The translations under genes were made by a program, and so were the position numbers. From the IMG/VR virus record IMGVR_UViG_3300020147_000065, positions 124,001 through 188,000 of that record: a DNA stretch of 64,000 bases; one strand, given 5' to 3'. A model generated the notes under the pieces. That model was given only the letters and a program-made list of their open reading frames with translations. It was not told the origin of the DNA and made no database searches. Numbering within the stretch: the stretch's first letter is position 1; every line of letters begins with the position of its first letter. This document shows, piece after piece, positions 36,772 through 63,437 of the stretch.

Positions 36772-37065
36772 ATGAATTTCTTACGCAACCCTCATTTTGT
36801 GGATTTTATCATTGATTTCACACAATGCAAAGCAGACGAAAGCGAACGTTTTGCACTTGCTAAGGCTCAGGGTGTAGCCTTCGCAGACTGGCGAATGACC
36901 ACCGACGCAGCCGACTTCGTTGTTGATTATTTCAACGCTTTACCCAAACAGGAACAGTTTCGGACGTTGGTTCGTGCCCGTCTCGATATGCGTCAACAGG
37001 CCGACGCATTAAACGCAAGCGTTGCAGAGTTTACTCAGGTGATAAACGCAGCCCGGTCTATGTAG
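36772..37065 (+). CDS. Cassette gene, hypothetical (leaderless)
   Basis: TTGTCG-CCCCGTGG spacer-TAAAAT-ATG. Confidence 0.7.
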   Translation: MNFLRNPHFVDFIIDFTQCKADESERFALAKAQGVAFADWRMTTDAADFVVDYFNALPKQEQFRTLVRARLDMRQQADALNASVAEFTQVINAARSM

Positions 37066-37142
37066 ACCGGGCTTGCCCCCCCGCTTACAATCATTCTTTT
37101 TCGTGTTATACTTGAATCAATTCAAGAGTTACGGAGAAAGCA

Positions 37143-37361
37143 ATGCGACACGCAAACCACGTAGTTTTACCAACGATCATCACTGAGACAGGAGATTATT
37201 TGACGCGCGGCGGTGAGGTCGTTAACATCACCTCGATTGTCCCTTACTCGGCTTATGGTGCTACCGGCACCTATCATTGTAATATCATAGACCATTGGGA
37301 TGTTTCAGGTCGGCTTTATCCCAACATGATAAGTGATAATGATATTGTCGAACGGGTATAA
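37143..37361 (+). CDS. Cassette gene, hypothetical
   Basis: GGAG SD; GDYLTRGGEVVNI. Confidence 0.65.
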   Translation: MRHANHVVLPTIITETGDYLTRGGEVVNITSIVPYSAYGATGTYHCNIIDHWDVSGRLYPNMISDNDIVERV

Positions 37362-37468
37362 TGGACAGGGAACGAAAGTTCCCTGTCTGCCCCCCCCCCG
37401 CCGGCACCCCTTGCATTCTCCCCGTGGTTTGCTATACTCTCAGTATCTTTAGTTAGAGAGGTTACGAC

Positions 37469-37780
37469 ATGAACAACGATGTGAAGATTCGCGGAATCGA
37501 GACGCCCGAACTGTGCCTGTGCTGCGGCTGCCAGGCCGAAATCGAAATCACCACGCCTGATGGTGTGGAGAAAATGTGCTTTTCTGAGGCGTTGCGTCAG
37601 TATCCTGACCATATGGCCGACTATGGCGAATCCATGTTTCGTGCTATGCAGGATGAGGCCGAAGTATTGGATGCGCAGTTGCAAGAGTTCCGCGCTGAGG
37701 CGTGGCACGAAGAAAATACACCACCGGCATGGTTTATGGATGAGCCGAACCCTTATATGGGTATGGGCTGCGATTTTTAA
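37469..37780 (+). CDS. Acidic Cys-containing small protein
   Basis: GAGG SD; CLCCGC motif. Confidence 0.65.
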   Translation: MNNDVKIRGIETPELCLCCGCQAEIEITTPDGVEKMCFSEALRQYPDHMADYGESMFRAMQDEAEVLDAQLQEFRAEAWHEENTPPAWFMDEPNPYMGMGCDF

Positions 37781-37883
37781 AACCTGCGCACTTTCCTGTT
37801 GTTTGGGAAAGTGCTGCCCCCCCCCTTGCTCCCATCTTTCTTTTTGTTATACTTGTAGTATCTTAGTTAGAGAGGTTAGAGCA

Positions 37884-38102
37884 ATGACTGAAAGCTATAA
37901 GCAAGCCGCAGAATGGGCGCAACATGAGGCAGACGTAACCGGCGAACCGTTTGTCGTCGTTCGGATGCCCAACACAACCGCGTATGGTTGCGAAAGAATC
38001 AGCGATTACGCAATGAAGATTCGCGGACGTGTCGCAGCAACAATTTATCTCGAAACGATTGTTCCGCAAGAGTGGCGGAAAGCAAGGAACGGTGAAAACT
38101 AA
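37884..38102 (+). CDS. Cassette gene, hypothetical
   Basis: GAGG SD, MTESYKQ; TAATG-coupled to the next gene. Confidence 0.6.
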   Translation: MTESYKQAAEWAQHEADVTGEPFVVVRMPNTTAYGCERISDYAMKIRGRVAATIYLETIVPQEWRKARNGEN

Positions 38103-38476
38103 TGGCTATCTCACGCGGCGGTAAAATCCGCAATGGTTCCTATGACCATAAATCTTATGGCCGTCCTCAGTTCGGTGTTGGTGGTGGTAATCGTATTCTC
38201 ACCAACGATAACACGAAATGGGGAGAATGGAAACGGGGCCACAAATACTCCCTGCGTATTCAAGACGTATCGCAGCGCAAGAACGGGCAAGTTCATGTGC
38301 AAGTGAAACCACACAAGGGCAACGGCGGCAGAGTCATTGAGAAAAAAGGTTTTGTGGAATTTTTAGACGGTGAACCACACATCACTGTAAATTGGCAGGG
38401 TAAACGCCTGACTATCGCTGAAATTCTCGCAATCGGCACACACTACGGAAATAAAGCGGCTCACTCTTCGGAGTGA
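38102..38476 (+). CDS. Basic hypothetical protein
   Basis: 124 aa; ends in a UUCG hairpin before the C-run. Confidence 0.65.
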   Translation: MAISRGGKIRNGSYDHKSYGRPQFGVGGGNRILTNDNTKWGEWKRGHKYSLRIQDVSQRKNGQVHVQVKPHKGNGGRVIEKKGFVEFLDGEPHITVNWQGKRLTIAEILAIGTHYGNKAAHSSE

Positions 38477-38543
38477 GCCTTGCCCCCCCCTTGCGCGATT
38501 TAAAGTTCTGCGTTATCCTTTATGTATCTTACGGAGGTTTATC

Positions 38544-38741
38544 ATGTGTTCTGATTCTTTTGCGTCTGCTTGTGCTATTGCCGAAGAGAAATCAAAGGAA
38601 ACACCAAAGTGTTTGCAGTGTGGTAAACCGATGGGGCCGGTTGAGGCCGCCATCAGCTCGACGTGTGGTAAATGTTGCCGTCTTAATCATCGTAAAGCGA
38701 TGGGAAAAAATAATGCTCAGAAAAATTGCCTTTTGGCTTAA
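38544..38741 (+). CDS. Small zinc-finger protein
   Basis: CLQCGK...CGKC; GGAGG SD. Confidence 0.55.
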   Translation: MCSDSFASACAIAEEKSKETPKCLQCGKPMGPVEAAISSTCGKCCRLNHRKAMGKNNAQKNCLLA

Positions 38742-38889
38742 TTACAATGATAAACGCGTCCCGCAATGGTTGCACAATCGCGTTTGTCGTGATCGTTGGA
38801 CGTGTGACGGGTGCTATCGTAAAATGGTGCCCCGTGGTGGAATGTATTTCGATAATGGCCCTTATTGTGGTCATTGCAACGGGAACTAA
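38713..38889 (+). CDS. Small zinc-finger protein
   Basis: MLRKIAF...CDGC...CGHC. Confidence 0.5.
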   Translation: MLRKIAFWLNYNDKRVPQWLHNRVCRDRWTCDGCYRKMVPRGGMYFDNGPYCGHCNGN

Positions 38890-38948
38890 TTAGTTCCCGT
38901 TGTGCCCCCCCCCTTGTGCTACTATTAATAGTGTGTAATAATTTAAGT

Positions 38949-39215
38949 ATGGCTAACCACTACGAACGCAATCGGACGTTTGCTCGGTTTCAACATAACG
39001 GAAAACACTATACCATCCACGAGCGCAAACATAAACTCAGCGATGGAACATGGCACACAAGCCGTTTTATCTGTGATGCTGCCGGAGATTGGCAAGGATG
39101 GGCAAAAGGTGTAAAGGTTGCGCGTGAAGTGTTGGATGGCAAGCGCGATAAGCATACCGGCAAACTTCTTGACCCTGTCGCCGCAATTCACGAAGCTGTA
39201 GCAGCTCTCCCATAA
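38949..39215 (+). CDS. Cassette gene, hypothetical (leaderless)
   Basis: C-run promoter then MANHYER. Confidence 0.65.
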   Translation: MANHYERNRTFARFQHNGKHYTIHERKHKLSDGTWHTSRFICDAAGDWQGWAKGVKVAREVLDGKRDKHTGKLLDPVAAIHEAVAALP

Positions 39216-39295
39216 GGAGAGCTGCCCCCCCCCTTGCAGCTAACTACATTCTGAGGGATAATAGATATATCACCTTTAGTTACGGAGAGTTTATC

Positions 39296-39694
39296 ATGTC
39301 AGAAGTAATCGCAAACGCCGACCTCGTGGGCCGCATCATGGAGATGGTGCAATGGGCCGTTGATAAAGATATGGGCATCCAAAAAGGTGCTTTTGGTCTT
39401 GTCATTCGCAATGGTCACTATGCCGTTGGCTCCTATGGCCACGTTTGCGCGTTGGGCGCGTGTATGCATGGTAAAGCTGTCACCGGCGGCAGTGTGCCCG
39501 ATTCATTCGCAAAAGAATATGGTGTCACCGACACTTGGGCGTGGGAGTTTGCCTATGGGTTCGATAACCCGACTAATCCCTATGGCTACACGGTCACTGA
39601 GGCCGTATTAACGGGCGCGGAAGTTCGCCGCCTATGCGATGAGCGCGGCATCGAAATAAAAGGCAGTCGAGACGTAAAAGACAAAGAGGATTAG
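39296..39694 (+). CDS. Cassette gene, hypothetical
   Basis: GGAG SD; VCALGAC motif. Confidence 0.7.
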   Translation: MSEVIANADLVGRIMEMVQWAVDKDMGIQKGAFGLVIRNGHYAVGSYGHVCALGACMHGKAVTGGSVPDSFAKEYGVTDTWAWEFAYGFDNPTNPYGYTVTEAVLTGAEVRRLCDERGIEIKGSRDVKDKED

Positions 39695-39808
39695 CAACCC
39701 TCTGCCCCCCCCCTTGCTCTATTTACCATATTTGTTAGAATAGATATGTAAGTCCTGTAATCCGCAGTCCTGGGACATTAGGCAACCAACTTACCACGGG
39801 AGAATTAA

Positions 39809-40003
39809 ATGTCACTCAGAGAACGACCAATCCATCGCTATTCCTGCCTTGTTCGAATTCCCGGTTCTGCAATTGCTCATCGCTATTACTATGAGGATTA
39901 CAATTCTCAAGGTGCGCGAGAAGCAATCAGACAGCAGGTAATCAATGCGTTTTCCCAAATTGATTCCCGTAAAATTAAAGTCAGCAAAGCTACAAGAGTC
40001 TAA
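39809..40003 (+). CDS. Small hypothetical protein behind a structured leader
   Basis: GGGAG SD. Confidence 0.55.
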   Translation: MSLRERPIHRYSCLVRIPGSAIAHRYYYEDYNSQGAREAIRQQVINAFSQIDSRKIKVSKATRV

Positions 40004-40013
40004 GGATAAAATC

Positions 40014-40154
40014 ATGCACAGATTTCGATTATTCAAAGACGGGGACATGTGGTGCGCGTTGACCGGGAGCAACATTCAAGAAGGGCGCGTTGGATTCGGA
40101 AAAACTCCATCCGAAGCGGTTAAAAATTGGGAGAAGGACAAGCCCCTTCCATAG
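40014..40154 (+). CDS. Small protein (GDxWCA...GFGKTPxEA motif)
   Basis: AGGA SD; MHRFRLFKDGDMWCA. Confidence 0.6.
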   Translation: MHRFRLFKDGDMWCALTGSNIQEGRVGFGKTPSEAVKNWEKDKPLP

Positions 40155-40227
40155 GGGCTTGTCGTTTTTAACCCCCCCTTGCGCTGATTCTCTACTTTGT
40201 TAAAATATAAAGCGAGGAGAGAATTTC

Positions 40228-40467
40228 ATGCGTTATCCACTAATTTGTTTGCTGACTGCGTTTCTCGGATGGTTCCCAATGGCCGCGTTTGGTGTAGGGC
40301 TTTTCGTCCATGCGGTTATTCGTTCGGTTCAATTCTGGATGTATCCCACCGTGGGCGGTTTTCTGGTGACAGTCGTTTCGACTCTACTGATTGTCGCTTA
40401 TATGAAAGTAACCGACCCCATCGCGGCATCGCTTTATAATCTGGAAACAGTAGCGAGTCTCTCTTGA
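40228..40467 (+). CDS. Small membrane protein
   Basis: Two hydrophobic segments; GAGGAG SD. Confidence 0.65.
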   Translation: MRYPLICLLTAFLGWFPMAAFGVGLFVHAVIRSVQFWMYPTVGGFLVTVVSTLLIVAYMKVTDPIAASLYNLETVASLS

Positions 40468-40521
40468 GAGACTCGCCCCCCCCCCTTGCAGTTATTGAGC
40501 ATCTGATATAAAATATGTTAT

Positions 40522-40710
40522 ATGAAAAGTTTTTATGTTAAGCAGACAACAAGAAACTCCCGTCACGGAAGTTCAAGTTGGGGAACAGGTCACGTCTGCT
40601 CAACTTATAGTGAACCAGTAGACTCCCTGTTTTTTGCAATTGTCCTTTATTTCGTCTATTTAATTACATTCGATACCGCGATCTGGAATTTGAGCATTAG
40701 ATATGAATGA
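40522..40710 (+). CDS. Small hypothetical protein (leaderless)
   Basis: C-run promoter directly before ATG. Confidence 0.55.
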   Translation: MKSFYVKQTTRNSRHGSSSWGTGHVCSTYSEPVDSLFFAIVLYFVYLITFDTAIWNLSIRYE

Positions 40711-40801
40711 CGCCCCCCCCCCTTGGCAGTATTTAATTTCCGCAGTATAATCTAATTGTCGCTGAGAAATACGGCGAACAAAAAACAAGGTGAGGTTTAC
40801 A

Positions 40802-40912
40802 ATGGGTGATTTTCTTCTCGAAATGTTGGGCGAAGTGGACGAAGCGACGGTAGCGGCACAAGAGACACAATTAGCTGAAGTTGCGGAAACCAAAGACGCC
40901 GACGACGACTAA
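40802..40912 (+). CDS. 36-aa acidic peptide (paralog of 41289-41420; not in ORF track)
   Basis: MGDFLLEMLGEVDEATVAAQETQLAEVAETKDADDD; GAGG SD. Confidence 0.7.
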   Translation: MGDFLLEMLGEVDEATVAAQETQLAEVAETKDADDD

Positions 40913-41046
40913 TTATAGTCACAAAGGGTAAAAACGATTCGCAATTATCGCGCGGGGGAATCCGAAAATTCTCCCGCTCCTTTGTGCCCCCCCCTTGCGT
41001 CAAGTGGTATATTTGTTAAAATAAATGGTGAAAGTGAGGAAAACAA

Positions 41047-41187
41047 ATGGCTGCTTTGACTGATGAACAGAAGAAATTGGGTTGGGTCGAAGGCACTTCC
41101 GCAGAGTTTCTCGGACTCACACCCGAAGAAGAAGCTCAGGTGCTCGAAGAAATGGAAGGTAAACCAGAAGCAGAGGACTCGGAGTAA
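41047..41187 (+). CDS. 46-aa peptide resembling the N-terminus of XRE/HTH antitoxins (not in ORF track)
   Basis: MAALTDEQKKLGWVEGTSAEFLGLTPEEEAQV...; GAGG SD. Confidence 0.65.
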   Translation: MAALTDEQKKLGWVEGTSAEFLGLTPEEEAQVLEEMEGKPEAEDSE

Positions 41188-41288
41188 TCCGGGGACTCTG
41201 CCCCCCCCCTTGCGCAATATCTCAAAGAAGTTAAAATATATTATGTCAGTCAGCAATGACGACAAATCAAATCTTTGGAGAAGAAACC

Positions 41289-41420
41289 ATGTCCATGCTC
41301 GATTTTTTGGCCGATATGCTCGGCGGGGAAGCCACGATGAACGATGTCCAGGCCCAGGAAGCCGCTGTCCTTGCGGCTGCGCGAGAAAAAGACGCCGAAG
41401 ATTACGACGACGAGGATTAG
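41289..41420 (+). CDS. 43-aa acidic peptide (paralog of 40802-40912; not in ORF track)
   Basis: MSMLDFLADMLGGEATMNDVQAQEAAVLAAAREKDAEDYDDED; GGAG SD. Confidence 0.7.
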   Translation: MSMLDFLADMLGGEATMNDVQAQEAAVLAAAREKDAEDYDDED

Positions 41421-41790
41421 TTTATCACTAATCAGGGAAAGGGAAAGTCCGAAAGACTTTCCCTTTTCTTTTTTGTCTGCCCCCCCCCCTACCATCCCAC
41501 TGATAAAATCTCCCCGTGGGTGGCGATCATATGGAAGATGGAAGGCCAGTGAACCATGTCAAAAATAAAATCGAGAATCACTTTCACCTCCCCCTTGCAG
41601 CCATTGTCACACCTTGTTAAAATTTAAGGTATGAAATGGCCCAAGATAATTATCACCACGCGGAAGTATATCTACGGTATCCAATCACAAACCCATTGTC
41701 AATGGTTGGTGATGTGCATAAACAGCATCTAAGGGAGTAGATGCTGCCCCCCCCCTTGCAGCACTTTCATAAATTGCGTATAATTTAATT

Positions 41791-42058
41791 GTGAGCGGCG
41801 GAGTGAGTAAGCAATAGGGCAGTGAGGTTGAGAGAGTAACGTATACGGCGCGGTGATGAGTGCGGAGCCAATCGGACATCGAGATGAGCAACTCCAAACA
41901 ATACTCTAAGGCTATGGAACGAGGAAATCAAGATACATATACCTGCTGAGGCCCAAAGCTCCAACGTGAGCGTTTTCATAACAAGCAAAGATGCTGCGTA
42001 AGAAATTCCGCCCCGTGCGGTGAGATTCAAAGGCCACGAATCCTATATGCGTGGTATC
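41791..42058 (+). ncRNA. Candidate non-coding RNA cassette 1
   Basis: Perfect TTGCAG-17-TATAAT promoter with no ORF filling the cassette; 5' GGCGGAGT can pair with ATTCCGCC near the 3' end. Confidence 0.5.
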
Positions 42059-42107
42059 TTTGCCCCCCCCCCTTGCTCTATAATCCTTATCTGTTAAAAT
42101 AGATTAT

Positions 42108-42341
42108 ATGAATTGCACAATCTGTGGAAAACCTGTCGTATTGGTGCCATCGGCTGAACATAGAGCCGCTAAAGATTGCACAGGTAAAACCGCTGCTTAT
42201 TATCGTAGTTTGTTCACTACCCACGCGGATTGTGAACTCAAAAAGCGGCGCGAGGAATCATTGCCGCGTCCTCTCACAGATTTAGAACGTGTGCAGTATG
42301 CCGGTCGTGGTATCAATTTACCAAATAAAATAATCATATGA
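42108..42341 (+). CDS. Small zinc-binding protein (leaderless)
   Basis: MNCTICGKPV...HADC. Confidence 0.7.
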   Translation: MNCTICGKPVVLVPSAEHRAAKDCTGKTAAYYRSLFTTHADCELKKRREESLPRPLTDLERVQYAGRGINLPNKIII

Positions 42342-42700
42342 CAAGAGTTTGGCGAGTAGAGAACTATCAAGGCTCCAGCCCGTTTGTGGAGCCTTATTTC
42401 GCTAATAAGCCACCCACGGGGTTACAGGTTGACCGACGTGATGATTTTGCTCATGTTAAAGAGTCCCTACCGTGGCGACGTGTTCGCTTCGGTATGACGA
42501 CGCGTGAAAATCTCATCGAATGGTTTGGTTTCTCATTAGTGAAAGAGTTCTACAAAGAGGGTTATCGAATAGTTACCTATATTGTAGACGATAGATACGT
42601 GATGCACTCTAAGAGTCGTTATCAGTTAATGTTTGATTTAGACCACGCGAGATTAGATTATGAGGTAGAAGAAAATCAACTAATGTCAGTATGGCCTTAA
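42338..42700 (+). CDS. Hypothetical protein, possibly ADP-ribosyltransferase-like fold
   Basis: VWRVE...FGMTT...WF...Q pattern loosely resembles ART strand motifs; ATGA overlap with the upstream gene. Confidence 0.4.
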   Translation: MTRVWRVENYQGSSPFVEPYFANKPPTGLQVDRRDDFAHVKESLPWRRVRFGMTTRENLIEWFGFSLVKEFYKEGYRIVTYIVDDRYVMHSKSRYQLMFDLDHARLDYEVEENQLMSVWP

Positions 42701-42748
42701 TGCCCCCCCCCCTTGACGTTCATCCCCGTGGATTGTAAAATAATTAAC

Positions 42749-43087
42749 ATGATTCAACCAGTAGCGGACGCATTACCCGGATTTATTAAAGCGGTCAACG
42801 AAAAAATGACTGACTATTGGGCGCGGCATTATCCTAACTTAACTGCACGTCAAGTCAAAGTCGGTGGTGGTGAGAAGTATATCAAAATCGTTGAAGTCGA
42901 GCATGGCGAAGTGCGTAGCATCTACTGTTTTATTGATGCTTCCAATGGTGATGTGCTTATGCCAGCAAGTTTCAAAAAACCCGCAAAACACGCGCGGGGT
43001 AACATCCTGACCGGCGACCCTGTAAATGACGGGTGTTGTGGGCCTCATGGTGTGCGATACATGGGAACTACCTTCTCTTGGGAGTAG
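42749..43087 (+). CDS. Conserved phage protein (KYIKIV...IYCFID...GDVLMPASFKKPAKHARGNI)
   Basis: Motif recognised from many phage genomes; leaderless behind TTGACG-CCCCGTGG-TAAAAT. Confidence 0.75.
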   Translation: MIQPVADALPGFIKAVNEKMTDYWARHYPNLTARQVKVGGGEKYIKIVEVEHGEVRSIYCFIDASNGDVLMPASFKKPAKHARGNILTGDPVNDGCCGPHGVRYMGTTFSWE

Positions 43088-43139
43088 GTAGTTGCCCCCC
43101 CCCCTTGTCAACAGAAATTATATGGATTAAAATATAAGC

Positions 43140-43823
43140 ATGGACAAAAAGATTGATGACGTTTTAAAGTTCGACCCGATTGACACCGCAGAAAAAATGA
43201 TGGGCGGCGATAGAAGTGATGCTTCTATGTTTCTGGGCCTCGCTCTGGCAATGGAGAACAACGAACAAAAAGAGCGCGTTTTAAATGCGTCAGGCGATAC
43301 GCATTTCAGCACCACGCTTGACCAATATATTTCTATTGTTCAGGGCATCGGTTTCGAGCAGGTTTTGTGCATCCCATTTGTCGGTGAAAAGTGGGGAAAA
43401 GAAACTGCCCCACAAGAGAAATTTTTCGTTTTCTTCGATAAGTCGCGCAGCATTTTGCTTACTTTCGACACCTATAACAGCGGCAAAGTCAACGGTGGCA
43501 AGTTTCTCTATAACATCAAGCCGAACAACGAAAAAAGTTTCTATAATGTTATTTCTTCCGGTGGCTACACGAAAGACAGTGACGGCAATTATGTTTGGGT
43601 TGGTGACCATGACTGCCGCGAAGCCATCAAACACAAGATTGCACGTTTAGAAGAAAACGGGCAATTCTTAACCAAATGGTTAGAGCGCCCTTTTCTCTGG
43701 TTGCTTCATTATATGGACACCAAAGACAAGAATTATGATTATCGCGCTATCAACGCGGAACGAATTGCAATGCTGCCGGATTACGTGCAAGAAGCAATCA
43801 CACCGGCTCAGTCTTCGGACTGA
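43140..43823 (+). CDS. Cassette gene, hypothetical (227 aa, leaderless)
   Basis: TTGTCA-17-TAAAAT-6-ATG; ends in a UUCG hairpin. Confidence 0.8.
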   Translation: MDKKIDDVLKFDPIDTAEKMMGGDRSDASMFLGLALAMENNEQKERVLNASGDTHFSTTLDQYISIVQGIGFEQVLCIPFVGEKWGKETAPQEKFFVFFDKSRSILLTFDTYNSGKVNGGKFLYNIKPNNEKSFYNVISSGGYTKDSDGNYVWVGDHDCREAIKHKIARLEENGQFLTKWLERPFLWLLHYMDTKDKNYDYRAINAERIAMLPDYVQEAITPAQSSD

Positions 43824-43873
43824 GCCTTGCCCCCCCCCTTGCTCTATGAAGTATTTATGGTAGAATATATTAC

Positions 43874-44263: not shown

Positions 44264-44314
44264 CAGCCTTGCCCCCCCCCTTGTGAACCTGCCCCGTGGT
44301 TGGTAAAATATAAA

Positions 44315-55653: not shown

Positions 55654-55732
55654 GCGGCGGGGAGCTGCCTTCAGGCAGCGACCTCTTGCCCCCCCCTTGC
55701 ACTAACCAACTAAAAACGATAGAATATATTCC

Positions 55733-56158: not shown

Positions 56159-56238
56159 GCAACGGGGAGCCATCCACGGGTGGCGACCTTTTGCCCCCCC
56201 CCTTGCACCAAAATAAGATAAGCGGTATAATTTATTAC

Positions 56239-56676
56239 ATGAGCGATACACAAACAACCCCCGAACTGACCGTGAACCAAGCCGCATTTAATGTTTTAAA
56301 TGCGAAAGTGACCGAAGGCGACAAGATTCGCGTCGTCCTCAAAGTGCCTATTACCGTGCATGGTAGTGATGTGAACTGGGTCGAAGAGATGGACAACACC
56401 ATCAACAAAACGCTTCGCGTTCGCCGCGTTGACGCAAGCAATGGTTCTTTCTATCTCAGCAACGGCTACTGGTATCCTGCCGTGGCACTCTCCACCGAAG
56501 TAGCAAAAATCACCGTGCCGCTGCCGGATTACACGGCGGAAATCACCAAAGAACAGGTCAACGTCGGCTGCCAGATTTTGACCAAAGAAATGATTCTCGG
56601 CATCGTGCAAGGCGCGTTGGATGTAGGGTTTCTGAGCGAAGAGGATGTGAACCGCCTCGACACCAGAGAAGTATAA
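56239..56676 (+). CDS. Paralog family C protein, copy 5
   Basis: Family C motifs; leaderless MSDTQT. Confidence 0.85.
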   Translation: MSDTQTTPELTVNQAAFNVLNAKVTEGDKIRVVLKVPITVHGSDVNWVEEMDNTINKTLRVRRVDASNGSFYLSNGYWYPAVALSTEVAKITVPLPDYTAEITKEQVNVGCQILTKEMILGIVQGALDVGFLSEEDVNRLDTREV

Positions 56677-56750
56677 CCGGGTGGACTCTTCGGAGTCCAC
56701 CCTGCCCCCCCCCCTTGCGCTGATAGAATTTAAACAGTATAATTTATTCC

Positions 56751-57167
56751 ATGAGTGAAACAAGAAAGACGGTTAATGACGCGGCGTTTGAAATCCTCAA
56801 CGCACAGTTGAACATTGGTGATAGAGTTCGTATTGTCGCCAAAATTGATGAGGGTGTCCACGGCAGCAAGACTGTTTGGACATCTCGCATGAATGATAGT
56901 GTGGGTCAGTTTATGACTATTCGCGGTGTTGAACCTGAGTATGGTGCTTTTCAGTTGGATAACTATTACTGGTATCCTGCCGTGGCACTCGATACTCAGG
57001 TGCATAAAGTGACGGTTAATCTGCCGGATTATTGCGCTGAAATCACCAAAGAAGGGGTGAACGTGGGTTGTCAGAACCTCACCAAAGAAATGATTCTGCA
57101 AATCGTGCAGGGCGCGTTAGACGTGGGTTTTCTCGATGCCGAGGACATCGAAAGTCTGAAAGTATAA
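56751..57167 (+). CDS. Paralog family C protein, copy 6
   Basis: Family C motifs. Confidence 0.85.
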   Translation: MSETRKTVNDAAFEILNAQLNIGDRVRIVAKIDEGVHGSKTVWTSRMNDSVGQFMTIRGVEPEYGAFQLDNYYWYPAVALDTQVHKVTVNLPDYCAEITKEGVNVGCQNLTKEMILQIVQGALDVGFLDAEDIESLKV

Positions 57168-57244
57168 GCGGCGGGGAGCTATCGAAAGATAGCGACCTTG
57201 CCCCCCCCTTGGCAACACTCAATATAAACAGTAAAATATAAGAC

Positions 57245-57643
57245 ATGAACATGAACCAAGCAGCATTCGAGACGTTGAAGGAAACGCGCGGCATCGGTGA
57301 CAAAGTGAAGGTTGTCCTGCAAGTGGACAAAGGTGTGCATGGAAACCTCTTCCGTTGGGATTCCGGTATGACCGAACAAATCGGAAAAGTCTTGACAATC
57401 AAAGAGTTCGATTCTTCGGACAACACCATCCTGCTGTCAGATAGCCGTTATTATCCCGCACTCGCTTTGATGAGCGACAACGGCCCCATTATCGTGGAAT
57501 TGCCCGATTACAAGGCAGAAATCCACGCTGACCGTGTGCAAGTTGGTTGTCAGTGCCTCACCAAACAGATGGTGTTGGACATCGTGAAGGGTGCAGTATC
57601 TGTCGGGTTTATGAGCGAATCAGATTTGGAGGGTCTGCGATAA
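57245..57643 (+). CDS. Paralog family C protein, copy 7
   Basis: Family C motifs. Confidence 0.85.
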   Translation: MNMNQAAFETLKETRGIGDKVKVVLQVDKGVHGNLFRWDSGMTEQIGKVLTIKEFDSSDNTILLSDSRYYPALALMSDNGPIIVELPDYKAEIHADRVQVGCQCLTKQMVLDIVKGAVSVGFMSESDLEGLR

Positions 57644-57720
57644 GCCCCCGCGGACTCTTCGGAGTCCGCCTTGCCCCCCCCCCTTGCACAAGGTTCAAAT
57701 TAAGGGGTATAATTTATTCC

Positions 57721-58137
57721 ATGAGCAAACAAAAGACGTTACACGACATTGCATTTGAAGAACTGGGCATCGAAGAGGGCGACTTCGCTAAAGTCGTCCT
57801 TAAAGTGGACGAAGACGTTCACGGTAACCCGCTCCGTTGGTCGCATGGTATGGAAGAAATGTTAGGTAAGACATTTCGCGTCACCAACATTGATACCAGC
57901 GACAACACAATCGAACTGAACAACGGCGAATGGTTCTCGGCTATTTCGCTCGAAAAGGCAACCGGCGAAATCAAGGTGCAATTACCGGATTACACCGCAG
58001 TCGTAACCAAAGAAGGCATGGAAGTTGGTTGCCAGAAACTCGACAAAGACAAGGTTTTGGAAATCGTTCAGGCTGCAATCACCACCGGTATGATTGACCG
58101 CGATGATGTCGAAGACCTCGACTATCACGACGACTAA
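57721..58137 (+). CDS. Paralog family C protein, copy 8
   Basis: Family C motifs; leaderless MSKQKT. Confidence 0.85.
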   Translation: MSKQKTLHDIAFEELGIEEGDFAKVVLKVDEDVHGNPLRWSHGMEEMLGKTFRVTNIDTSDNTIELNNGEWFSAISLEKATGEIKVQLPDYTAVVTKEGMEVGCQKLDKDKVLEIVQAAITTGMIDRDDVEDLDYHDD

Positions 58138-58212
58138 GCGGGGTGCTGCCTTCGGGCAGCACTCTTGCCCCCCCCCCTTGCCTTGTCCCCGTGGTTGGGT
58201 TATCCTTTACAT

Positions 58213-58506
58213 ATGTCCGACGAATATCCTTTAACAGTTAAACAAGTAAACAAACTCATGGATGATGTTTTCAATACTGAGCCGCCAGAGCTTGTTCTTG
58301 CTCGTAAACTTAAAGAAGCCGGTTTTACTGAGCATCAAGTATGGAGAATGTTTATTGCTCGTAATGATGAGCCGAAACCTTATGCCCCACACTTTGCAAG
58401 CTATATAAGTTCAAATGAAGCAATTCGTTTGAGAGTTTATAATTTTTTTCGTGACTTCGAACGTGGTGGAGTGTGTCGGCGGATAGATACCGGATTAATC
58501 AGTTAA
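58213..58506 (+). CDS. Cassette gene, hypothetical (leaderless)
   Basis: TTGCCT-CCCCGTGG spacer-TATCCT then ATG. Confidence 0.65.
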   Translation: MSDEYPLTVKQVNKLMDDVFNTEPPELVLARKLKEAGFTEHQVWRMFIARNDEPKPYAPHFASYISSNEAIRLRVYNFFRDFERGGVCRRIDTGLIS

Positions 58507-58559
58507 TCCGGTTGCCCCCCCCCCTTGCATCGGTTAAATCTCTGAGTTATCCTTTATAT

Positions 58560-59069
58560 ATGATAACCGAACGCATCAACCATTCAGATATTGATTCTCG
58601 CCATGCTAACGACTTCATTAACGCATGGTATAATGAAGTTGCCAAACGCGGCGAAATTTACGCCACAAACGCTGAAATTTTAGCGAAAGAAACCGCACTC
58701 GATTTGTTGTCAAAGGGTGCCGGTGAAATTGTTTACGGGCGCAAAAAGGACGATTTGTTGCGCGTTAACGATAAGGGTTTAATTCCCGAAAACAAAAAGT
58801 TGTTTTTTAAAGCCGTTGTCGGCTATGCTTATTTGTGGGGTATTGCTCTTAGTGTTGAAATATCGGAGCAGCTACCCACGGGCGCTAAAATCGAATATAT
58901 TGCCGATGACCTATGCCCCCATAAAGACCGGCAAGTGACGCAAGAATTTCAATGGAAATATCGCAAGCGTAGCGACGATGAAGAAATCGAAAAAGAGGCC
59001 GAAGCCGACACACAAGACGAAGAAACGGCAGAAGTCGAACCCTGCCCCGCTGGGGAGGTGATCGAATAG
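58560..59069 (+). CDS. Cassette gene, hypothetical with acidic tail
   Basis: Leaderless MITERIN. Confidence 0.7.
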   Translation: MITERINHSDIDSRHANDFINAWYNEVAKRGEIYATNAEILAKETALDLLSKGAGEIVYGRKKDDLLRVNDKGLIPENKKLFFKAVVGYAYLWGIALSVEISEQLPTGAKIEYIADDLCPHKDRQVTQEFQWKYRKRSDDEEIEKEAEADTQDEETAEVEPCPAGEVIE

Positions 59070-59122
59070 GGCGATTGCCCCCCCCCTTGGCAACTCATGA
59101 AAAAGGGAGTAAAATATTTAAC

Positions 59123-59401
59123 ATGAATCAAGAACATCAACAAATCGTTGTTTCTGCCGCTGAAAAACTCAATAAAATGGCGGGTATTGTTGGTGCAAGC
59201 ACCATCCCATTTCATCCTGCACTCAATGAAGATGAAGTGAACGACATTCTCAATGAGGCTCAAGCGTTCGGCTTGACTGCCGAACGCACTGATTTTCTGA
59301 ATGACCACGAGGGTCAGGACTTCACCAACATCACCTTTGAACTCGCCAACCGGCAGGGTGCCCATATGCTGGATGCTCTGCGTGGAGCCTCTCCTGTATA
59401 A
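59123..59401 (+). CDS. Cassette gene, hypothetical
   Basis: Leaderless MNQEHQQ. Confidence 0.7.
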   Translation: MNQEHQQIVVSAAEKLNKMAGIVGASTIPFHPALNEDEVNDILNEAQAFGLTAERTDFLNDHEGQDFTNITFELANRQGAHMLDALRGASPV

Positions 59402-59455
59402 GGAGAGTTTGCCCCCCCCTTGTAATACTCATAGAAATTGCGTATAATTTATTAC

Positions 59456-59638
59456 ATGACAAGCAACGGAATCATGAATCAGTTGGGCAAGTGCTACCGC
59501 GCCGTTTTCAATGGCAACGACAATTCTGCAACGTGGGCGAAAATTCATCGCCTCACCCGCCGTCACGAACGGGCGCTCGAAAAAGAGGCCGAGTCTGCGG
59601 AGCCTCAAATCGAGGGAGCAGCCGAAGTAGACAATTAG
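59456..59638 (+). CDS. Small cassette gene
   Basis: TATAAT then leaderless MTSNGI. Confidence 0.6.
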   Translation: MTSNGIMNQLGKCYRAVFNGNDNSATWAKIHRLTRRHERALEKEAESAEPQIEGAAEVDN

Positions 59639-59742
59639 TTGCTCTCTTGCTCATGCACCTCCGGCCACTACCTCAGTTTCGACTGGGGTAGTGTGCTGCC
59701 CCCCCCTTGTTCTATATTTGTTTGCTTGATATAATTATTATC

Positions 59743-60543
59743 ATGCTCTTAGAAAAAGAACAACCAAAACCAAAACCAAAGAAAAAGGTGCCGTCAAACT
59801 GTTATGAAGTTGTCATAACGGCCAACCACGGGGACGCAGACCATAGCGAAGAGAGAACAATTCGTATCCCTGACAGCCGCGAAGACCTCCTGAAGATGCT
59901 CTTGCATGACATTGATGTAACAGAGCGTTATTATTCACATGACAATTTTGAAGAATCACCGTTTATGCGGAAATGGTGTGAAGACGGCGACGACGAATCT
60001 ATCGTCAATGAATGTCGAGAAATCAGCTTTACAGATTGGCCGCGCGACATCACTGCCGACCGGCAATTCCCCTGCACATTCTATTTTGGCCCTGATGTTT
60101 ATTATTATGATGAACAGGGTGAGCGTTTACACGTTACTGTAACTTATTCTGACGAAGAAAAAGCGACAGAAGAAGAGCGGTTAAAAGGGACGTGGGAAAA
60201 AACAAAGGCCGCAGTTATCGCAGAAGAAAAGGCCGAACGTGCCAATAAATCAGAGCAGAGATGCGCGGTTTGTGGGCAAACTCAGTGGTCGTATGGTGGG
60301 CCGCGCAAAACCTGTTCGAGTTGCGGTAGTGAACTGCTTTACACTCAGCGTCTTTTTGATGCTGACGGCGAAACGATTACTGATAATGACAATCCTTATC
60401 AGTCAATCGAAGACCTCCGCACTAAAATTCTGCCGGAATTGGATAAGTTGCGCGAAAACGACAATTCTCGCTATTTTCAGCGGTGGTGGTTCATAAACCG
60501 AAAAGTTGAGAACCACGACAAAGGTTTACCGGAAGACGCTTAG
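59743..60543 (+). CDS. Hypothetical protein with zinc ribbon
   Basis: CAVCG...CSSCG; leaderless MLLEKEQ. Confidence 0.75.
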   Translation: MLLEKEQPKPKPKKKVPSNCYEVVITANHGDADHSEERTIRIPDSREDLLKMLLHDIDVTERYYSHDNFEESPFMRKWCEDGDDESIVNECREISFTDWPRDITADRQFPCTFYFGPDVYYYDEQGERLHVTVTYSDEEKATEEERLKGTWEKTKAAVIAEEKAERANKSEQRCAVCGQTQWSYGGPRKTCSSCGSELLYTQRLFDADGETITDNDNPYQSIEDLRTKILPELDKLRENDNSRYFQRWWFINRKVENHDKGLPEDA

Positions 60544-60601
60544 GCGTCTTCCTTGCCCCCCCCCTTGCGAACTTTCCCCGTGGTTGGTTAAAATCTATAA
60601 C

Positions 60602-61258
60602 ATGAATCGAGATTACCCACCGGCACCATATCGTTGCGAAATTGTTTGTTCTGATGATTTGCGCGTATCTGCTGAACTTGATAAAACTACAATCAATATC
60701 AGCTATCGTTTACATCACATCGCAACATATGAAAATGGGAGCCGTGATTTTTCTTTTATTCGCCGTGTGCCTACAATCGGTGAATTTATTGATATTATCC
60801 ACGAATACCCTTGCGAGTTACGAGATGATATTAACGACGGAAAACTCGCATCTCATGTGTTAGGTGGAATCTTTATATTTGAGAATCCACAAACTAAAGA
60901 TTCTTTTGTATCATTCGCTCCCCTCAATGCCGAGACACTATATGAGCAAACAGCTAATGCTGTTCATTATGCTTCATTTGGTAGTGTAATTGAAGGTGAA
61001 GCTAATCGCGCATGGCGAGATAAGTTTGTGCAAGTAGCTGTCCTCGATCATAACGGCAACGGTTATAGCGTGTTAAGTAATAATCCTTTAGTTCCCGATG
61101 TTTGGTTTAATTCGGTTCGCCGCCGAACATTAAATCGCGCTGAGGCCGAAGAGCGTGTTCGCCGCATCTGTGCTGATAATCGTGATGTAGTTGTGCGCTG
61201 GTGCCCAACTAATAACCTGCCACCGGACTGGTGTAATGAGCGCACGAAGATTATATAA
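60602..61258 (+). CDS. Cassette gene, hypothetical
   Basis: TTGCGA-CCCCGTGG spacer-TAAAAT then MNRDYPP. Confidence 0.75.
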   Translation: MNRDYPPAPYRCEIVCSDDLRVSAELDKTTINISYRLHHIATYENGSRDFSFIRRVPTIGEFIDIIHEYPCELRDDINDGKLASHVLGGIFIFENPQTKDSFVSFAPLNAETLYEQTANAVHYASFGSVIEGEANRAWRDKFVQVAVLDHNGNGYSVLSNNPLVPDVWFNSVRRRTLNRAEAEERVRRICADNRDVVVRWCPTNNLPPDWCNERTKII

Positions 61259-61327
61259 TCTTCGTGTTGCCCCCCCCCTTGCACCACCTAAACAACGGAG
61301 TTAAAATCTTTAGTGAAAGGAACAGAC

Positions 61328-61528
61328 ATGGCATCTGACATCACCAAAGAACAAAAACGGGCATATCGGCAAATGGGGCGCGAAGATGGACGCGCAGGGC
61401 GTTCCGCCTCAGAGTTCCACAACACACCACACGAATTGGTTCAAGCGTATAACTCCGGTCATAAATCCGGTAAACGCACACTGGAAAACGAAAAGGCACA
61501 GCGCGACTATGAATTAAGCAAGTGGTAA
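61328..61528 (+). CDS. Small hypothetical protein
   Basis: AAGGA SD; AYxxGxxDG/AYxxG motifs. Confidence 0.6.
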   Translation: MASDITKEQKRAYRQMGREDGRAGRSASEFHNTPHELVQAYNSGHKSGKRTLENEKAQRDYELSKW

Positions 61529-61749
61529 CGCCTTGACAGCACCTCTTAAACCTGTTATAATAAGAGTATGATATTCTTATGGGTAGGGGTGCTTTTCTTG
61601 GCTCCATTGTTTTGCATGGGGAATAAGACTGCCCTCGGTGTAATTTACGGTGCATTTGCCTTGTGGTTATTGTATAATGGAGTATGCTAACCACGGGGCA
61701 GGTGCCCCCCCCCCTTGATTAATGTAAAACAATTGATTAAAATAAAAGT

Positions 61750-62187
61750 ATGATTTCAGAAAAAGCGCGAGTGCTGAATTTACTTTTAGAACGTAATGAG
61801 GTATCAAAAATTGACTTTGAATTAGGTGGAGAAATCATTATAACTCTTTCCCCTAAGCTTACAAAGTTACAAGAACACAAAAAGATGCGAGAAAAGAAAT
61901 ATTCTGAATCAGAAATTGGTGCATCGGTGGACGAGCGTGTTCGAGAAGTTTTATTGAAAGATAAACCAATGACTATACCTGAGATAACAGCAGCAGTAGG
62001 CTGCTGTTATCAGAGGGCAAAAACCGCAATAGATGCGGCAACAATACACGGTGTTATTAATATCGTTGAATGTCGCACTGGTGAATTAAGAGGAAAACTC
62101 CCTCATCTTCATCAAATTACCGAAGACGGAAAGAAAAAATTAAACGAGGAAAGGTGGTGGATTTACCTCAAGAAACCTAAAAATTAG
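61750..62187 (+). CDS. Winged-HTH-like DNA-binding protein
   Basis: VREVLLKDKPMTIPEITAAVG...HQITEDGKKKL pattern. Confidence 0.55.
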   Translation: MISEKARVLNLLLERNEVSKIDFELGGEIIITLSPKLTKLQEHKKMREKKYSESEIGASVDERVREVLLKDKPMTIPEITAAVGCCYQRAKTAIDAATIHGVINIVECRTGELRGKLPHLHQITEDGKKKLNEERWWIYLKKPKN

Positions 62188-62240
62188 GTTTCTTGCCCCC
62201 CCCCTTGCACGACCATAATAAAAGAGGTAGAATAATTACT

Positions 62241-62504
62241 ATGAATCCATTCAACACACGACTGTTCAGCGCAACCCGCGAGAAAATCAACGAATTTCTC
62301 TATGCTCGGCTATCGAATCCCGAAAATCCGAATAACGGCGAAGAAACACATCGTTACCACGGAAGCACCTTAAAACAGCGCAAGCGTCGCCTGTCTCACA
62401 CAAATCCGGCATCGCATCACTATGCGAACTACACGAAGCGCAAGCGTCGCCAGAAACACGCGCGTAAGATGTTGGCAAAGCAACGCGCGGCGGCTGTTGC
62501 ATAA
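62241..62504 (+). CDS. Basic small protein
   Basis: Leaderless MNPFNT; RKRR clusters. Confidence 0.6.
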   Translation: MNPFNTRLFSATREKINEFLYARLSNPENPNNGEETHRYHGSTLKQRKRRLSHTNPASHHYANYTKRKRRQKHARKMLAKQRAAAVA

Positions 62505-62576
62505 GTTCGCTCTCCGCTCCGGCGGAGAGCTTGCCCCCCCCTTGCATCCTTATAACTTCTGAGTTATATTTTAAGT

Positions 62577-63383
62577 ATGCAATTCAGAATCCTTGACCCT
62601 CAAACGGACGGCGGCGGAGTCCTTCACATAACAGCGACCGGCACAGAAGAAATAAAGGCCGTGTTTGGTGTTTTTCATTGGCGGGACGAATCAACGGAAA
62701 CCCTTAAAGCGCGTGTCACCGCTTTAGAATCCGGCCAATATAGCCTGATTTGCAACGATAAACGGAAATGGTATCGCAATGAAGTCGAATTGTCTGCCGA
62801 TTGGGTTAGCCCATATATCGAAGAGTTGCAAAAACGAACGGGCTACAGTGGCGAACTTCCCGAACTCGATTTAATTGATTGTGTAAAGCGTATAACGCAC
62901 ACACATTTAATCGAATCTGTAAAACTCACAGACGGTAAATTGTCTGCGGTGATTTATGTAAAATCAGAAGATTACGCCGGTAAACCGGCTGTTGACCGTT
63001 CGCGCTGGTATTCGCGGGAATGTCTCGGAAACGACTTCGGGGCAACGCCTGTGCATAGTGAATATATCGAAACGAGCGCCGGAAACTACCGTAAAAATCC
63101 AGCGTGGGGACACTACCACAAACCGCGCCCCGCTTTAGCTAACGCGGCATTTTTCAACAAATTGTTTAAGTGGTGGCGGGATAACCACGCAACCGACTTA
63201 CAAAAAGACTTATTAGAACGCGGCCTAAAATATGGCCTCTATTCTAATAACTGGTTAATGACACAGGGGCACCAACAATGCGTGGATTTAGGGCACGGCG
63301 GTTTCCGAATCACACCGAACGGCAACGGGCCTGACAGCTATAAATTTATGAGTTGGGAACAGTTCCGCGCGGTGGCTACGTAG
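62577..63383 (+). CDS. Cassette gene, hypothetical (268 aa)
   Basis: Leaderless behind TTGCAT-17-TATATT. Confidence 0.75.
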   Translation: MQFRILDPQTDGGGVLHITATGTEEIKAVFGVFHWRDESTETLKARVTALESGQYSLICNDKRKWYRNEVELSADWVSPYIEELQKRTGYSGELPELDLIDCVKRITHTHLIESVKLTDGKLSAVIYVKSEDYAGKPAVDRSRWYSRECLGNDFGATPVHSEYIETSAGNYRKNPAWGHYHKPRPALANAAFFNKLFKWWRDNHATDLQKDLLERGLKYGLYSNNWLMTQGHQQCVDLGHGGFRITPNGNGPDSYKFMSWEQFRAVAT

Positions 63384-63437
63384 CCACCGCTTGCCCCCCC
63401 CTTGCAGAGATTAAACTAATTTGCGATAATATATTAC

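What the first reader, a model, noticed from the sequence alone, without database searches (positions are those of the whole stretch)
37041..63392. Cassette-end hairpins are unrelated in sequence, often built from the gene's own last codons, and lack U-tracts
Seen: GCCCGGTCTA-TG-TAGACCGGGC (37041), GGCTGTCAC...GTGACAGCC (~44245), GGAAGACGC...GCGTCTTCC (60531), GCGGTGGCTACGTAGCCACCGC (~63369) and many UUCG/GAAA-loop stems. The stop codon often lies in the loop or right arm, and the stem is followed at once by (TT)GCCCC rather than a T-run. Canonical U-tailed terminators exist elsewhere (28893, 33026). Inference: structure, not sequence, is conserved, as in attC sites; alternatively hairpin plus C-run is a non-canonical terminator or processing signal.
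Basis: partly seen in the sequence, partly recalled or inferred. Interest (0 to 1): 0.7.

Follow-up and report, generated by a model that had tools for sequence, protein, structure and literature searches.

The report
Phage cassette junctions: hairpin, poly-C, promoter
In a 221-kb uncultivated soil phage, about 80 small genes in a row are each separated by the same three-part joint (an RNA hairpin, a run of 7-11 C's, and a promoter that starts the next message at its ATG), which is a streamlined and partly new version of the promoter/terminator cassettes of T4-like phages, not an integron.

Summary
In 37041-63400 there are 61 junctions with G+C(7-11). Of these, 53 have a stable upstream hairpin, usually ending 0-3 nt before the G, and none has a U-tail. 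The hairpins differ in sequence. They are selected as sense-strand RNA structures: UUCG/GNRA loops are enriched (p=2e-15), G.U pairs outnumber A.C appositions 12:3, and 8 of 10 pairs covary among paralogous junctions. The stop codon lies inside the hairpin in 33 of 53 assignable cases.

It is flush with a sigma-70-type promoter (TTGCnn, 17 nt, TAtAAT), and the next ATG sits 6-7 nt after the -10, so the mRNAs are probably leaderless.

The attC reading fails. There is no tyrosine recombinase, no R'/R'' consensus, the hairpins are only 16-42 nt, and every cassette has its own promoter.

A related phage (capsid protein 65% identical) also has hairpin + C(9-16) at gene ends, usually with the promoter 35-150 nt further on. 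Hairpin and C-run are therefore the conserved pair.

Best reading: PeSL-like terminator/promoter junctions whose U-less hairpin marks and protects the mRNA 3' end. The role of the C-run is unresolved; Rho entry is the leading guess. No transcript data were available.

The parts
31924..63401 (+). In-window part of an array of about 80 small-gene cassettes. The array spans genome 155.9-193.1 kb and runs past the window end. Junctions consist of hairpin, G+C(7-11), promoter and ATG.
37050..37073 (+). Gene-end RNA hairpin (-18.7 kcal/mol). The stop codon TAG of ORF 36772-37065 lies at the loop/right-arm boundary.
37075..37082 (+). G+C7 run. Here it is followed after 2 nt by TTACAa, then about 16 nt, then TATACT (37107-37112), then a leader with a Shine-Dalgarno sequence and ATG at 37143. 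This is the leadered variant.
44245..44268 (+). Gene-end hairpin (-15.4) with the stop codon in the right arm. It is followed by the run at 44271-44280, a -35 at 44281-44286 and a -10 at 44304-44309. A CCCGTGG motif lies in the spacer.
60531..60552 (+). Gene-end hairpin (-15.6) with the stop codon in the loop.
60555..60604 (+). G+C9 run (60555-60564), flush -35 TTGCGA (60565-60570), -10 TAAAAT (60589-60594), and ATG at 60602, 7 nt after the -10 (leaderless start).
63369..63390 (+). Gene-end hairpin (-16.9) with the stop codon at the loop/right-arm boundary.
63393..63440 (+). G+C8 run (63393-63401), -35 TTGCAG (63402-63407), -10 GATAAT (63425-63430), and leaderless ATG at 63438.
53817..58137 (+). 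Eight tandem paralogous cassettes (132-157 aa, 35-56% identical). Their junction hairpins are at 55163-55186, 55659-55684, 56164-56189, 56679-56702, 57173-57198, 57650-57669 and 58140-58165, and they covary.
31924..35138 (+). C-runs not flush with a promoter; they are followed by AC... (31924, 33735, 34029, 34744, 35130; also 41479 and 53531 further on). Most still have a hairpin upstream.
28893..28928 (+). Canonical hairpin + T-tail terminator, included for contrast. It reads as a terminator in both directions.
33025..33059 (+). Canonical hairpin + T-tail terminator, included for contrast.

Best explanation
The window comes from a ~221-kb uncultivated soil phage. No phage RNA polymerase was detected. 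Positions ~31.9-64 kb (continuing to genome 193 kb) form a hyperplastic array of about 80 mostly orphan small genes.

Each junction is a composite transcription-unit boundary with three parts:
1. A sense-strand RNA stem-loop, 8-11 bp and often with a UUCG or GNRA loop. It sits at the end of the upstream ORF and often overlaps it.
2. G + C(7-11), starting 0-3 nt after the stem.
3. Directly flush with the run, a sigma-70-type promoter (TTG[C/T]nn, 17 nt, TAtAAT). The predicted +1 is the A of the next ATG, giving a leaderless mRNA.

Shown: the anatomy, its statistics, the covariation, and the conservation of the hairpin + C-run pair in a relative.

Inferred: the hairpin defines and protects the 3' end of each cassette mRNA and attenuates read-through. 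It is not a classical intrinsic terminator, because an rC:dG hybrid is the opposite of a U-tract. Read-through RNA cannot translate the next ORF, which has no Shine-Dalgarno sequence, so it is a natural Rho substrate. The C-run directly after the hairpin would then be the Rho entry (or pause) element, with the hairpin acting as the exonuclease stop. This mirrors E. coli Rho-dependent 3' ends. The repeated junctions also offer homology for cassette gain and loss, as with PeSLs.
For: Anatomy.

Hairpins exceed chance.

The hairpins act as RNA on the sense strand. UUCG/GNRA loops are found in 18 of 31 junction tetraloop hairpins against 81 of 1634 elsewhere, p=2e-15. G.U pairs number 12 against 3 A.C appositions. 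Covariation is seen in 8 of 10 pairs, with 87.5% of cells paired against 35-56% in the slid controls.

Hairpins go with unit boundaries: 95% of junctions with a C-run have a hairpin of -10 or lower, against 37% of junctions without one, and tight operon junctions have none.

There is no T-tail at the junctions, while T-tailed terminators are used elsewhere in the same genome.

Host-type promoters are likely used: no T7-like or multisubunit RNAP was found, and one sigma-like gene is present.

A relative (capsid protein 65% identical) has hairpin + C(9-16), with 13 of 16 runs having a stable hairpin ending <=2 nt before the run. Its promoter is usually 35-150 nt downstream and is flush in 2 cases. 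Gene content of the two arrays is almost unshared.

Literature: PeSL composite promoter/terminator cassettes (PMC2839356, PMC4122927). Rho-dependent 3' ends are stable hairpins without U-tracts, with rut sites just downstream (PMC6061677).
Against: No transcript data: no RNA run was listed. The 3' ends, the start sites and the leaderless status are all predictions.

Beyond the run there is no extended C>G region in this phage, so a rut site would be only 8-11 nt long, which is short for Rho.

The run is flush with the -35 in 76 of 99 sites, and roughly 6-10 promoters have a run but no hairpin. This fits a promoter role for the run equally well.

The host is unknown, so whether it has Rho or translates leaderless mRNA well is also unknown.
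Confidence: 0.6

Rival explanations
1. The C-run is an upstream element of the promoter, or an activator site, or a slippage-prone phase-variable tract that sets promoter strength. The hairpin is an independent gene-end structure that abuts the run only because the genome is compact.
For: The run is flush with TTG in 76 of 99 sites.

Run length is bimodal: 0-3 or 7-10, never 4-6. Promoters with a run have TTG[C/T], while promoters without one have TTGAC (Fisher p=3e-8).

Roughly 6-10 promoters have a run but no hairpin.

Run length differs by 1 between assemblies, between the copies of the terminal repeat, and between samples.

There is precedent for 7-11-nt G/C tracts in sigma-70 promoters that modulate transcription (PMC7864442). 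A spirochaete genome carries many copies of G-C(7-9)-TTGCC-17-TATAcAAT.
Against: In the relative, the run stays within 0-2 nt of the hairpin while the promoter is 35-150 nt away. Its TTGCAC promoters have only CC upstream. The TTGC-type -35 is therefore a trait of the promoter class, not a consequence of the run.

Seven runs in the window have no flush promoter but mostly do have a hairpin.

One-nucleotide differences in homopolymer length can be sequencing error.
Confidence: 0.25
2. The repeated junction (hairpin + homopolymer + promoter) is mainly a DNA-level recombination joint. It would shuffle cassettes without an integrase, by PeSL-like homologous or microhomology exchange.
For: The arrays of two phages with 65% identical capsid proteins share almost no genes yet have the same junction type.

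The array contains an 8-fold tandem paralogue family and one cassette in inverted orientation (window 50526-51122).

Homing-type HNH and GIY-YIG genes sit in the arrays.

PeSLs were shown to recombine and form mini-circles (PMC2839356).
Against: No recombinant or mini-circle form was seen; only assembled contigs were available.

The RNA-specific features of the hairpins (tetraloops, G.U pairs, strand bias) are not explained by a DNA role.

This reading is compatible with the best explanation rather than exclusive of it.
Confidence: 0.2
3. The hairpins are ordinary intrinsic terminators that work without a U-tract in this phage's host.
For: The stems are GC-rich, have terminator-like size and loops, and sit at gene ends.
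Against: The same genome uses classical T-tailed terminators about 44 times.

A C-run gives the most stable possible RNA:DNA hybrid, which should disfavour release. This rests on established termination mechanics and is an inference here.
Confidence: 0.1
4. The hairpins are attC-like or other structure-specific recombination sites of an integron-like system.
For: An array of promoter-proximal small cassettes whose ends form hairpins of unrelated sequence.
Against: No tyrosine recombinase in the genome.

No R'/R'' consensus: 0 of 61 sites.

The elements are 16-42 nt with mostly perfect stems.

Every cassette has its own promoter.

The loops are RNA-type tetraloops on the sense strand.
Confidence: 0.03

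Closest known systems
PeSLs (promoter-early stem-loops) of T4-type phages (PMC2839356, PMC4122927)
   Same: Both are composite stem-loop + strong sigma-70-like promoter units. Both flank orphan genes in hyperplastic regions. The stem-loop can sit upstream of the -35 or overlap it; elsewhere in this genome some hairpins carry TTGACA in their loop.
   Different: [quoted passage not shown] Most cassettes lack a Shine-Dalgarno sequence and look leaderless. The phage is not T4-like: its capsid protein matches phrog_3990 and its DNA polymerase is at most 37% identical to that of any cultured phage. Recombination and mini-circles have not been shown.
[quoted passage not shown]
   Same: A stable hairpin without a U-tract, with C-rich sequence immediately downstream.
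   Different: The C-rich part here is a pure homopolymer of 8-11 nt (9-16 in the relative), with no longer C>G region in this phage. Rho dependence has not been tested.
Integron attC sites
   Same: Cassette boundaries where structure, not sequence, is conserved.
   Different: No integrase, no R/L boxes, a much shorter element, function at the RNA level, and cassettes that carry their own promoters.
Homopolymeric G/C tracts in sigma-70 promoters of Treponema pallidum tpr genes and Neisseria opc/porA (PMC7864442)
   Same: A tract of 7-11 nt at a promoter, with small length differences between copies or samples.
   Different: About 100 tracts in one phage genome, always on the sense strand and next to a hairpin. 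Length variation within a population has not been shown.
Leaderless mRNAs such as lambda cI from PRM (my own knowledge, not tested here)
   Same: The ATG lies at the predicted +1, 6-7 nt after the -10, with pyrimidine at -1 and A at +1.
   Different: Used here for about 60-70 genes of a single phage rather than one regulator.

Membership tests
PeSL (T4-type composite promoter/terminator cassette) | Strong sigma-70-like promoter in the intergenic repeat | tested here: met
   TTG is invariant, the spacer is 17 nt in 60 of 76 sites, and the -10 is TAtAAT.
PeSL (T4-type composite promoter/terminator cassette) | Stable stem-loop adjacent to or overlapping the promoter | tested here: met
PeSL (T4-type composite promoter/terminator cassette) | [quoted passage not shown] | tested here: not met
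   A C(7-11) run lies upstream of the -35. The ATG is 6-7 nt after the -10 and has no Shine-Dalgarno sequence in 38 of 53 flush junctions.
PeSL (T4-type composite promoter/terminator cassette) | Located in hyperplastic regions rich in orphan genes | tested here: met
   9 of 10 tested cassette proteins have no Pfam hit. One has no homologue among 5.8 billion proteins. Array content is unshared with the relative.
PeSL (T4-type composite promoter/terminator cassette) | Host genome is a T4-type myovirus | tested here: not met
   Only RIIA is T4-like. The capsid protein, terminase and DNA polymerase are distant from T4 types.
PeSL (T4-type composite promoter/terminator cassette) | Recombination between units (indels, mini-circles) | not testable with these tools
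   Only assembled contigs of the source sample were available.
Integron / attC | Integron integrase (tyrosine recombinase) present | tested here: not met
   PF00589 has no match in the 221-kb genome; the controls were positive.
Integron / attC | R''/R' core sites (RYYYAAC / GTTRRRY) and a length of 57-141 nt | tested here: not met
   GTTRRRY is found at 0 of 61 sites. Element length has a median of 25 nt and a range of 16-42.
Integron / attC | Mostly promoterless cassettes expressed from a common Pc promoter | tested here: not met
   52 of 61 junctions carry their own -35/-10.
Canonical intrinsic terminator | GC-rich hairpin | tested here: met
Canonical intrinsic terminator | U-tract directly after the stem | tested here: not met
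   0-3 T, then G + C-run.
Rho-dependent terminator with protective 3' hairpin | Stable hairpin without a U-tract at the 3' end | tested here: met
   This applies to the sequence only; the 3' ends have not been mapped.
Rho-dependent terminator with protective 3' hairpin | C-rich, G-poor rut region downstream | tested here: inconclusive
   The C-run is present, but there is no C>G bias beyond it in this phage. In the relative the intergenic region looks G-poor by eye.
Rho-dependent terminator with protective 3' hairpin | Termination depends on Rho | not testable with these tools
   No RNA data and the host is unknown.
Phase-variable homopolymer promoter tract | Tract length varies within a population and changes expression | tested here: inconclusive
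   +/-1 C between two assemblies (57673, 58167), between the terminal-repeat copies (11 vs 10), and between samples of the relative. Sequencing error cannot be excluded.

The most novel reading that the evidence does not exclude
Hairpin + homopolymeric C-run is a previously undescribed, lineage-wide transcription-boundary signal. It would be a factor-dependent terminator or insulator read by Rho or by an unknown poly(C)-binding factor. It may also serve as a register-free recombination joint that lets these phages swap single-gene, self-promoted, leaderless cassettes without an integrase.
Probability: 0.25. Interest if true: 0.8.

Novelty: new variant of a known kind. Interest (0 to 1): 0.6.

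Why it matters
Two things would follow if the transcript predictions hold. First, this phage would be an extreme natural example of modular gene expression: about 80 consecutive one-gene units, each with its own promoter, a leaderless start and a structured 3' end. Second, the hairpin + poly-C pair, conserved across two divergent phages, points to a way of ending or insulating transcription that does not use a U-tract. That makes it directly testable how Rho or another factor is recruited in phage early regions. It would also supply compact, portable promoter/boundary parts.

Tried and rejected
- attC/integron reading: rejected.
- N4-type hairpin promoters for a virion RNA polymerase: considered and rejected. 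The hairpins have no conserved loop or stem bases, they lie about 47 nt upstream of the predicted start, and no phage RNA polymerase was found (the PF00940 control was uninformative).
- Rfam: no family matches in the window.
- Searching for the junction motif in IMG/VR and JGI metagenomes returned only the window's own contig as a multi-copy hit.
- DNA-polymerase relatives (53-60% identity) have neither C-runs nor leaderless promoters, so they were uninformative.
- The capsid-protein search in IMG/VR found nothing. The protein-database route found the relative.
- RNA-seq runs: none was listed.
- The read-laying output showed 'joints' between junctions, but these are repeat cross-alignments with short sides, not variants.
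- No phage-encoded cold-shock-domain or Rho RNA-binding domain was found.
- One cassette paralogue has no homologues outside this genome.
- The idea that C-run pairing with upstream G's systematically extends the hairpin was checked (40 of 80 sites). I judged this unspecific.


Full report
**What the sequence is.** The window is positions 124001-188000 of a 221,108-bp virus contig from a soil metagenome. The first ~186 nt of the contig recur at its end, apart from one C in a homopolymer, so the genome is closed or terminally repeated. It encodes RIIA, a DnaB-type helicase, ribonucleotide reductase, a DNA polymerase, a major head protein and a terminase. The best DNA-polymerase match among cultured phages is 37% identical. 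I found no tyrosine recombinase, no T7-like RNA polymerase and no multisubunit RNA polymerase, and one sigma-like gene. The T7-like search had no positive control. The window runs from late structural genes on the minus strand (1-29 kb) into a long array of small plus-strand genes (about 31.9 kb to the window end and on to genome 193 kb).

**Checking the observation.** GCCCCC occurs 83 times in the window against 22.8 +/- 4.5 expected, and 74 of these are on the + strand from 31924 on. Genome-wide there are 99 runs of C>=7 (lengths 7-11), 92 of them on the + strand and 80 within 155.9-193 kb. A or T runs of that length total only 7.

The 40 nt upstream of each run fold at a mean of -14.5 kcal/mol, against -5.5 for random windows and -6.8 for shuffles. 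84% reach -8 or lower, against 20% and 34%. Stems are mostly 8-11 bp, 43 of 71 loops are tetraloops, and the stem ends 0-3 nt before the G in 61 of 71.

In the stated range (37041-63400) there are 61 junctions. 53 have a hairpin of -8 or lower, and in 46 it lies within 3 nt of the G. The stop codon of the upstream ORF lies inside the hairpin in 33 of 53 assignable cases, most often in the right arm. None of the junction hairpins has a T-tail.

Aligning all junctions on the C-run shows that 76 of the 99 runs are followed at once by TTG. Position 4 of that hexamer is C or T in 68 of 76. A TAtAAT hexamer follows after a 17-nt spacer in 60 of 76. An ATG lies 6-7 nt after that hexamer, usually as pyrimidine-ATG, and opens the ORF that runs to the next junction.

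In the stated range, 53 of 61 runs are flush with TTG, 52 have a -10, and 38 have the ATG 5-9 nt after it. This is the geometry of a sigma-70-type promoter whose +1 is the A of the start codon, that is, a leaderless mRNA. A minority of junctions (for example 37075, 37389, 37816) instead carry a conserved leader with a Shine-Dalgarno sequence.

Each cassette is therefore its own predicted transcription unit. Hairpins go with these boundaries: 95% of junctions with a run have a hairpin of -10 or lower, against 37% of junctions without one, and tightly coupled gene pairs have none.

**The hairpins are RNA structures on the sense strand and are selected for structure.**
- UUCG or GNRA loops close 18 of 31 junction tetraloop hairpins, against 81 of 1634 tetraloop hairpins elsewhere on either strand (p=2e-15).
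- Their complements are nearly absent.
- Internal G.U pairs outnumber A.C appositions 12 to 3.
- Eight tandem paralogous cassettes (53817-58137, 35-56% protein identity) keep the junction hairpin through compensatory changes in 8 of 10 pairs. 87.5% of cells are paired, against 64.6% in shuffles and 35-56% when the partner is slid.

**Not attC.** There is no integrase. No GTTRRRY is found at any of the 61 hairpin ends, and the elements are 16-42 nt long. Cassettes carry their own promoters, and the features are RNA-type. Rfam has no matching family.

**Where the C-run belongs.** Within this genome the run looks like part of the promoter.
- It is flush with the -35.
- Its length is bimodal (0-3 or 7-10).
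- Promoters with a run have TTG[C/T], whereas leaderless promoters without a run have TTGAC (p=3e-8).
- Roughly 6-10 promoters have a run but no hairpin.

A relative changes the picture. The capsid protein has a 65%-identical homologue on a 150-kb JGI contig. I walked out from it and found a divergently transcribed array of small genes (loci L297, L300, L304). In that array, 13 of 16 C-runs (9-16 nt) sit 0-2 nt after a stable hairpin. The next promoter is usually 35-150 nt further on. It is CC-TTGCAC, 17 nt, TATACT with the same conserved leader, or TTGACA. It is flush with the run only twice.

Runs without a flush promoter in the window (31924, 33735, 34029, 34744, 35130, 41479, 53531) mostly also keep their hairpin and are followed by AC..., as in the relative. 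So the hairpin + C-run pair is the conserved unit. The TTGC-type -35 is a trait of the promoter class. The flush, leaderless arrangement is a streamlined state of the window's phage.

The two arrays share almost no genes, which fits rapid cassette turnover. Run lengths differ by one C in three comparisons: between two assemblies of the source sample, between the two copies of the terminal repeat, and between samples of the relative. This may be real slippage or sequencing error.

**Mechanism.** The closest described system is the PeSL of T4-type phages. PeSLs are composite stem-loop + early-promoter units that flank orphan genes in hyperplastic regions. They have been shown to terminate, to promote and to recombine (PMC2839356, PMC4122927). 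Elsewhere in this genome, hairpins even enclose the -35 TTGACA in their loop and use the promoter spacer as their T-tail. This matches the PeSL subclasses.

The differences from PeSLs are the C-run in place of an AT-rich upstream region, the missing Shine-Dalgarno sequence, and the unrelated phage lineage.

A hairpin followed by a C-run cannot work as a classical intrinsic terminator, because the rC:dG hybrid is maximally stable. This is an inference from established termination mechanics. The best-fitting known model is the Rho-dependent 3' end: a stable hairpin without a U-tract that stops 3' exonucleases, with the rut site just downstream (PMC6061677). Leaderless design would leave read-through RNA untranslated over the next ORF, which is the condition Rho needs. 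Against this, the C-rich stretch is only the run itself in this phage. No RNA data exist. I found no phage-encoded Rho-like or cold-shock-domain protein.

Three readings therefore remain open, and they do not exclude one another:
- boundary element (my preferred reading);
- promoter or phase-variable tract, with precedent in T. pallidum and Neisseria (PMC7864442);
- recombination joint.

**Verdict.** The feature is real and highly non-random. The element is a new variant of the PeSL kind, with two unusual traits (the poly-C partner of the hairpin, and mass use of leaderless starts) whose function needs transcript mapping.

Noticed in passing
whole genome; in the window e.g. 28983, 36748, 37421, 42725, 44293, 47284, 52773, 53148, 58188, 60577 (+) and 51332, 53801, 56174, 61691 (-): The motif CCCGTGG-N3-G (roughly cCCCGTGGwTrGc) occurs 138 times in the 221-kb genome, against about 14 in shuffles. 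It is found on both strands, about every 1.6 kb, mostly inside genes, with no frame or strand preference. In the array it also sits in the -35/-10 spacer of about 10 promoters. It is not palindromic and its role is unknown; a protein-binding, nicking or modification site are possibilities.
   Followed up: partly
L016 7374-19781 and L017 71-12555 (genome 195.3-216.5 kb): A cluster of about 36 tRNA genes. It includes two suppressor-type tRNAs, with anticodon CTA (reads UAG) and TCA (reads UGA). This hints at stop-codon recoding somewhere in the phage's program. All three stop codons are used at cassette ends in the array.
   Followed up: no
genome 1-186 and 220923-221108 (L009 1-186; L017 end): The contig ends repeat each other except for a C-run of 11 versus 10. 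The genome is therefore probably complete (circular assembly or terminal repeat) even though it is catalogued as linear and 89% complete.
   Followed up: partly
genome 6654 (L009), 43589 minus strand (L011), 67802 (L012), 205724 (L017): A second promoter class, (C)C-TTGACA, 17 nt, TGnTATAAT, without a long C-run. In several copies a terminator hairpin carries the -35 hexamer in its loop and its T-tail lies in the promoter spacer.
   Followed up: partly
window 34100-34152, 35184-35236, 35781-35833, 41531-41583: A 53-nt direct repeat beginning ATGGAAGAAGGAAAG..., in four copies (75-100% identical). Each lies downstream of a promoter-less C-run and a second hairpin. It may be a small RNA, a leader peptide or a regulatory element.
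   Followed up: no
window 37107-37145, 37430-37470, 37848-37885; L297, L300, L304: A conserved leader, TATACT-N3-AGTATCTTAGTTAGAGAGG-N7-ATG, is shared between this phage and its relative although the genes downstream differ.
   Followed up: no
window 48184-48708 (+); 50526-51122 (-): There is an HNH endonuclease gene inside the array. There is also one cassette in inverted orientation. That cassette is one of only three weak protein matches between the relative's array and this genome, and the only clear one within the array (43% identity to L297 minus strand 3994-4605).
   Followed up: partly
L174, L188, L196, L201, L213, L215, L220, L224, L232, L253 (Candidatus Haliotispira prima chromosome): A spirochaete genome carries more than 30 dispersed copies of G-C(7-9)-TTGCC-17-TATAcAAT. 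The motif is part of a longer repeat that is followed by a short conserved ORF-like stretch with ATATCCA-type repeats. It is an independent case of a C-run flush with a -35.
   Followed up: partly
L300 671-685 and 3372-3410; L297 and L304 contig ends: In the relative's contigs some hairpins are followed by G-runs instead of C-runs, and contigs break at homopolymers. These are probably assembly or sequencing artefacts at the runs. One hairpin (L300 ~2905-2930 versus L304 ~1310-1335) differs at 9 positions between strains that are otherwise 98% identical.
   Followed up: partly
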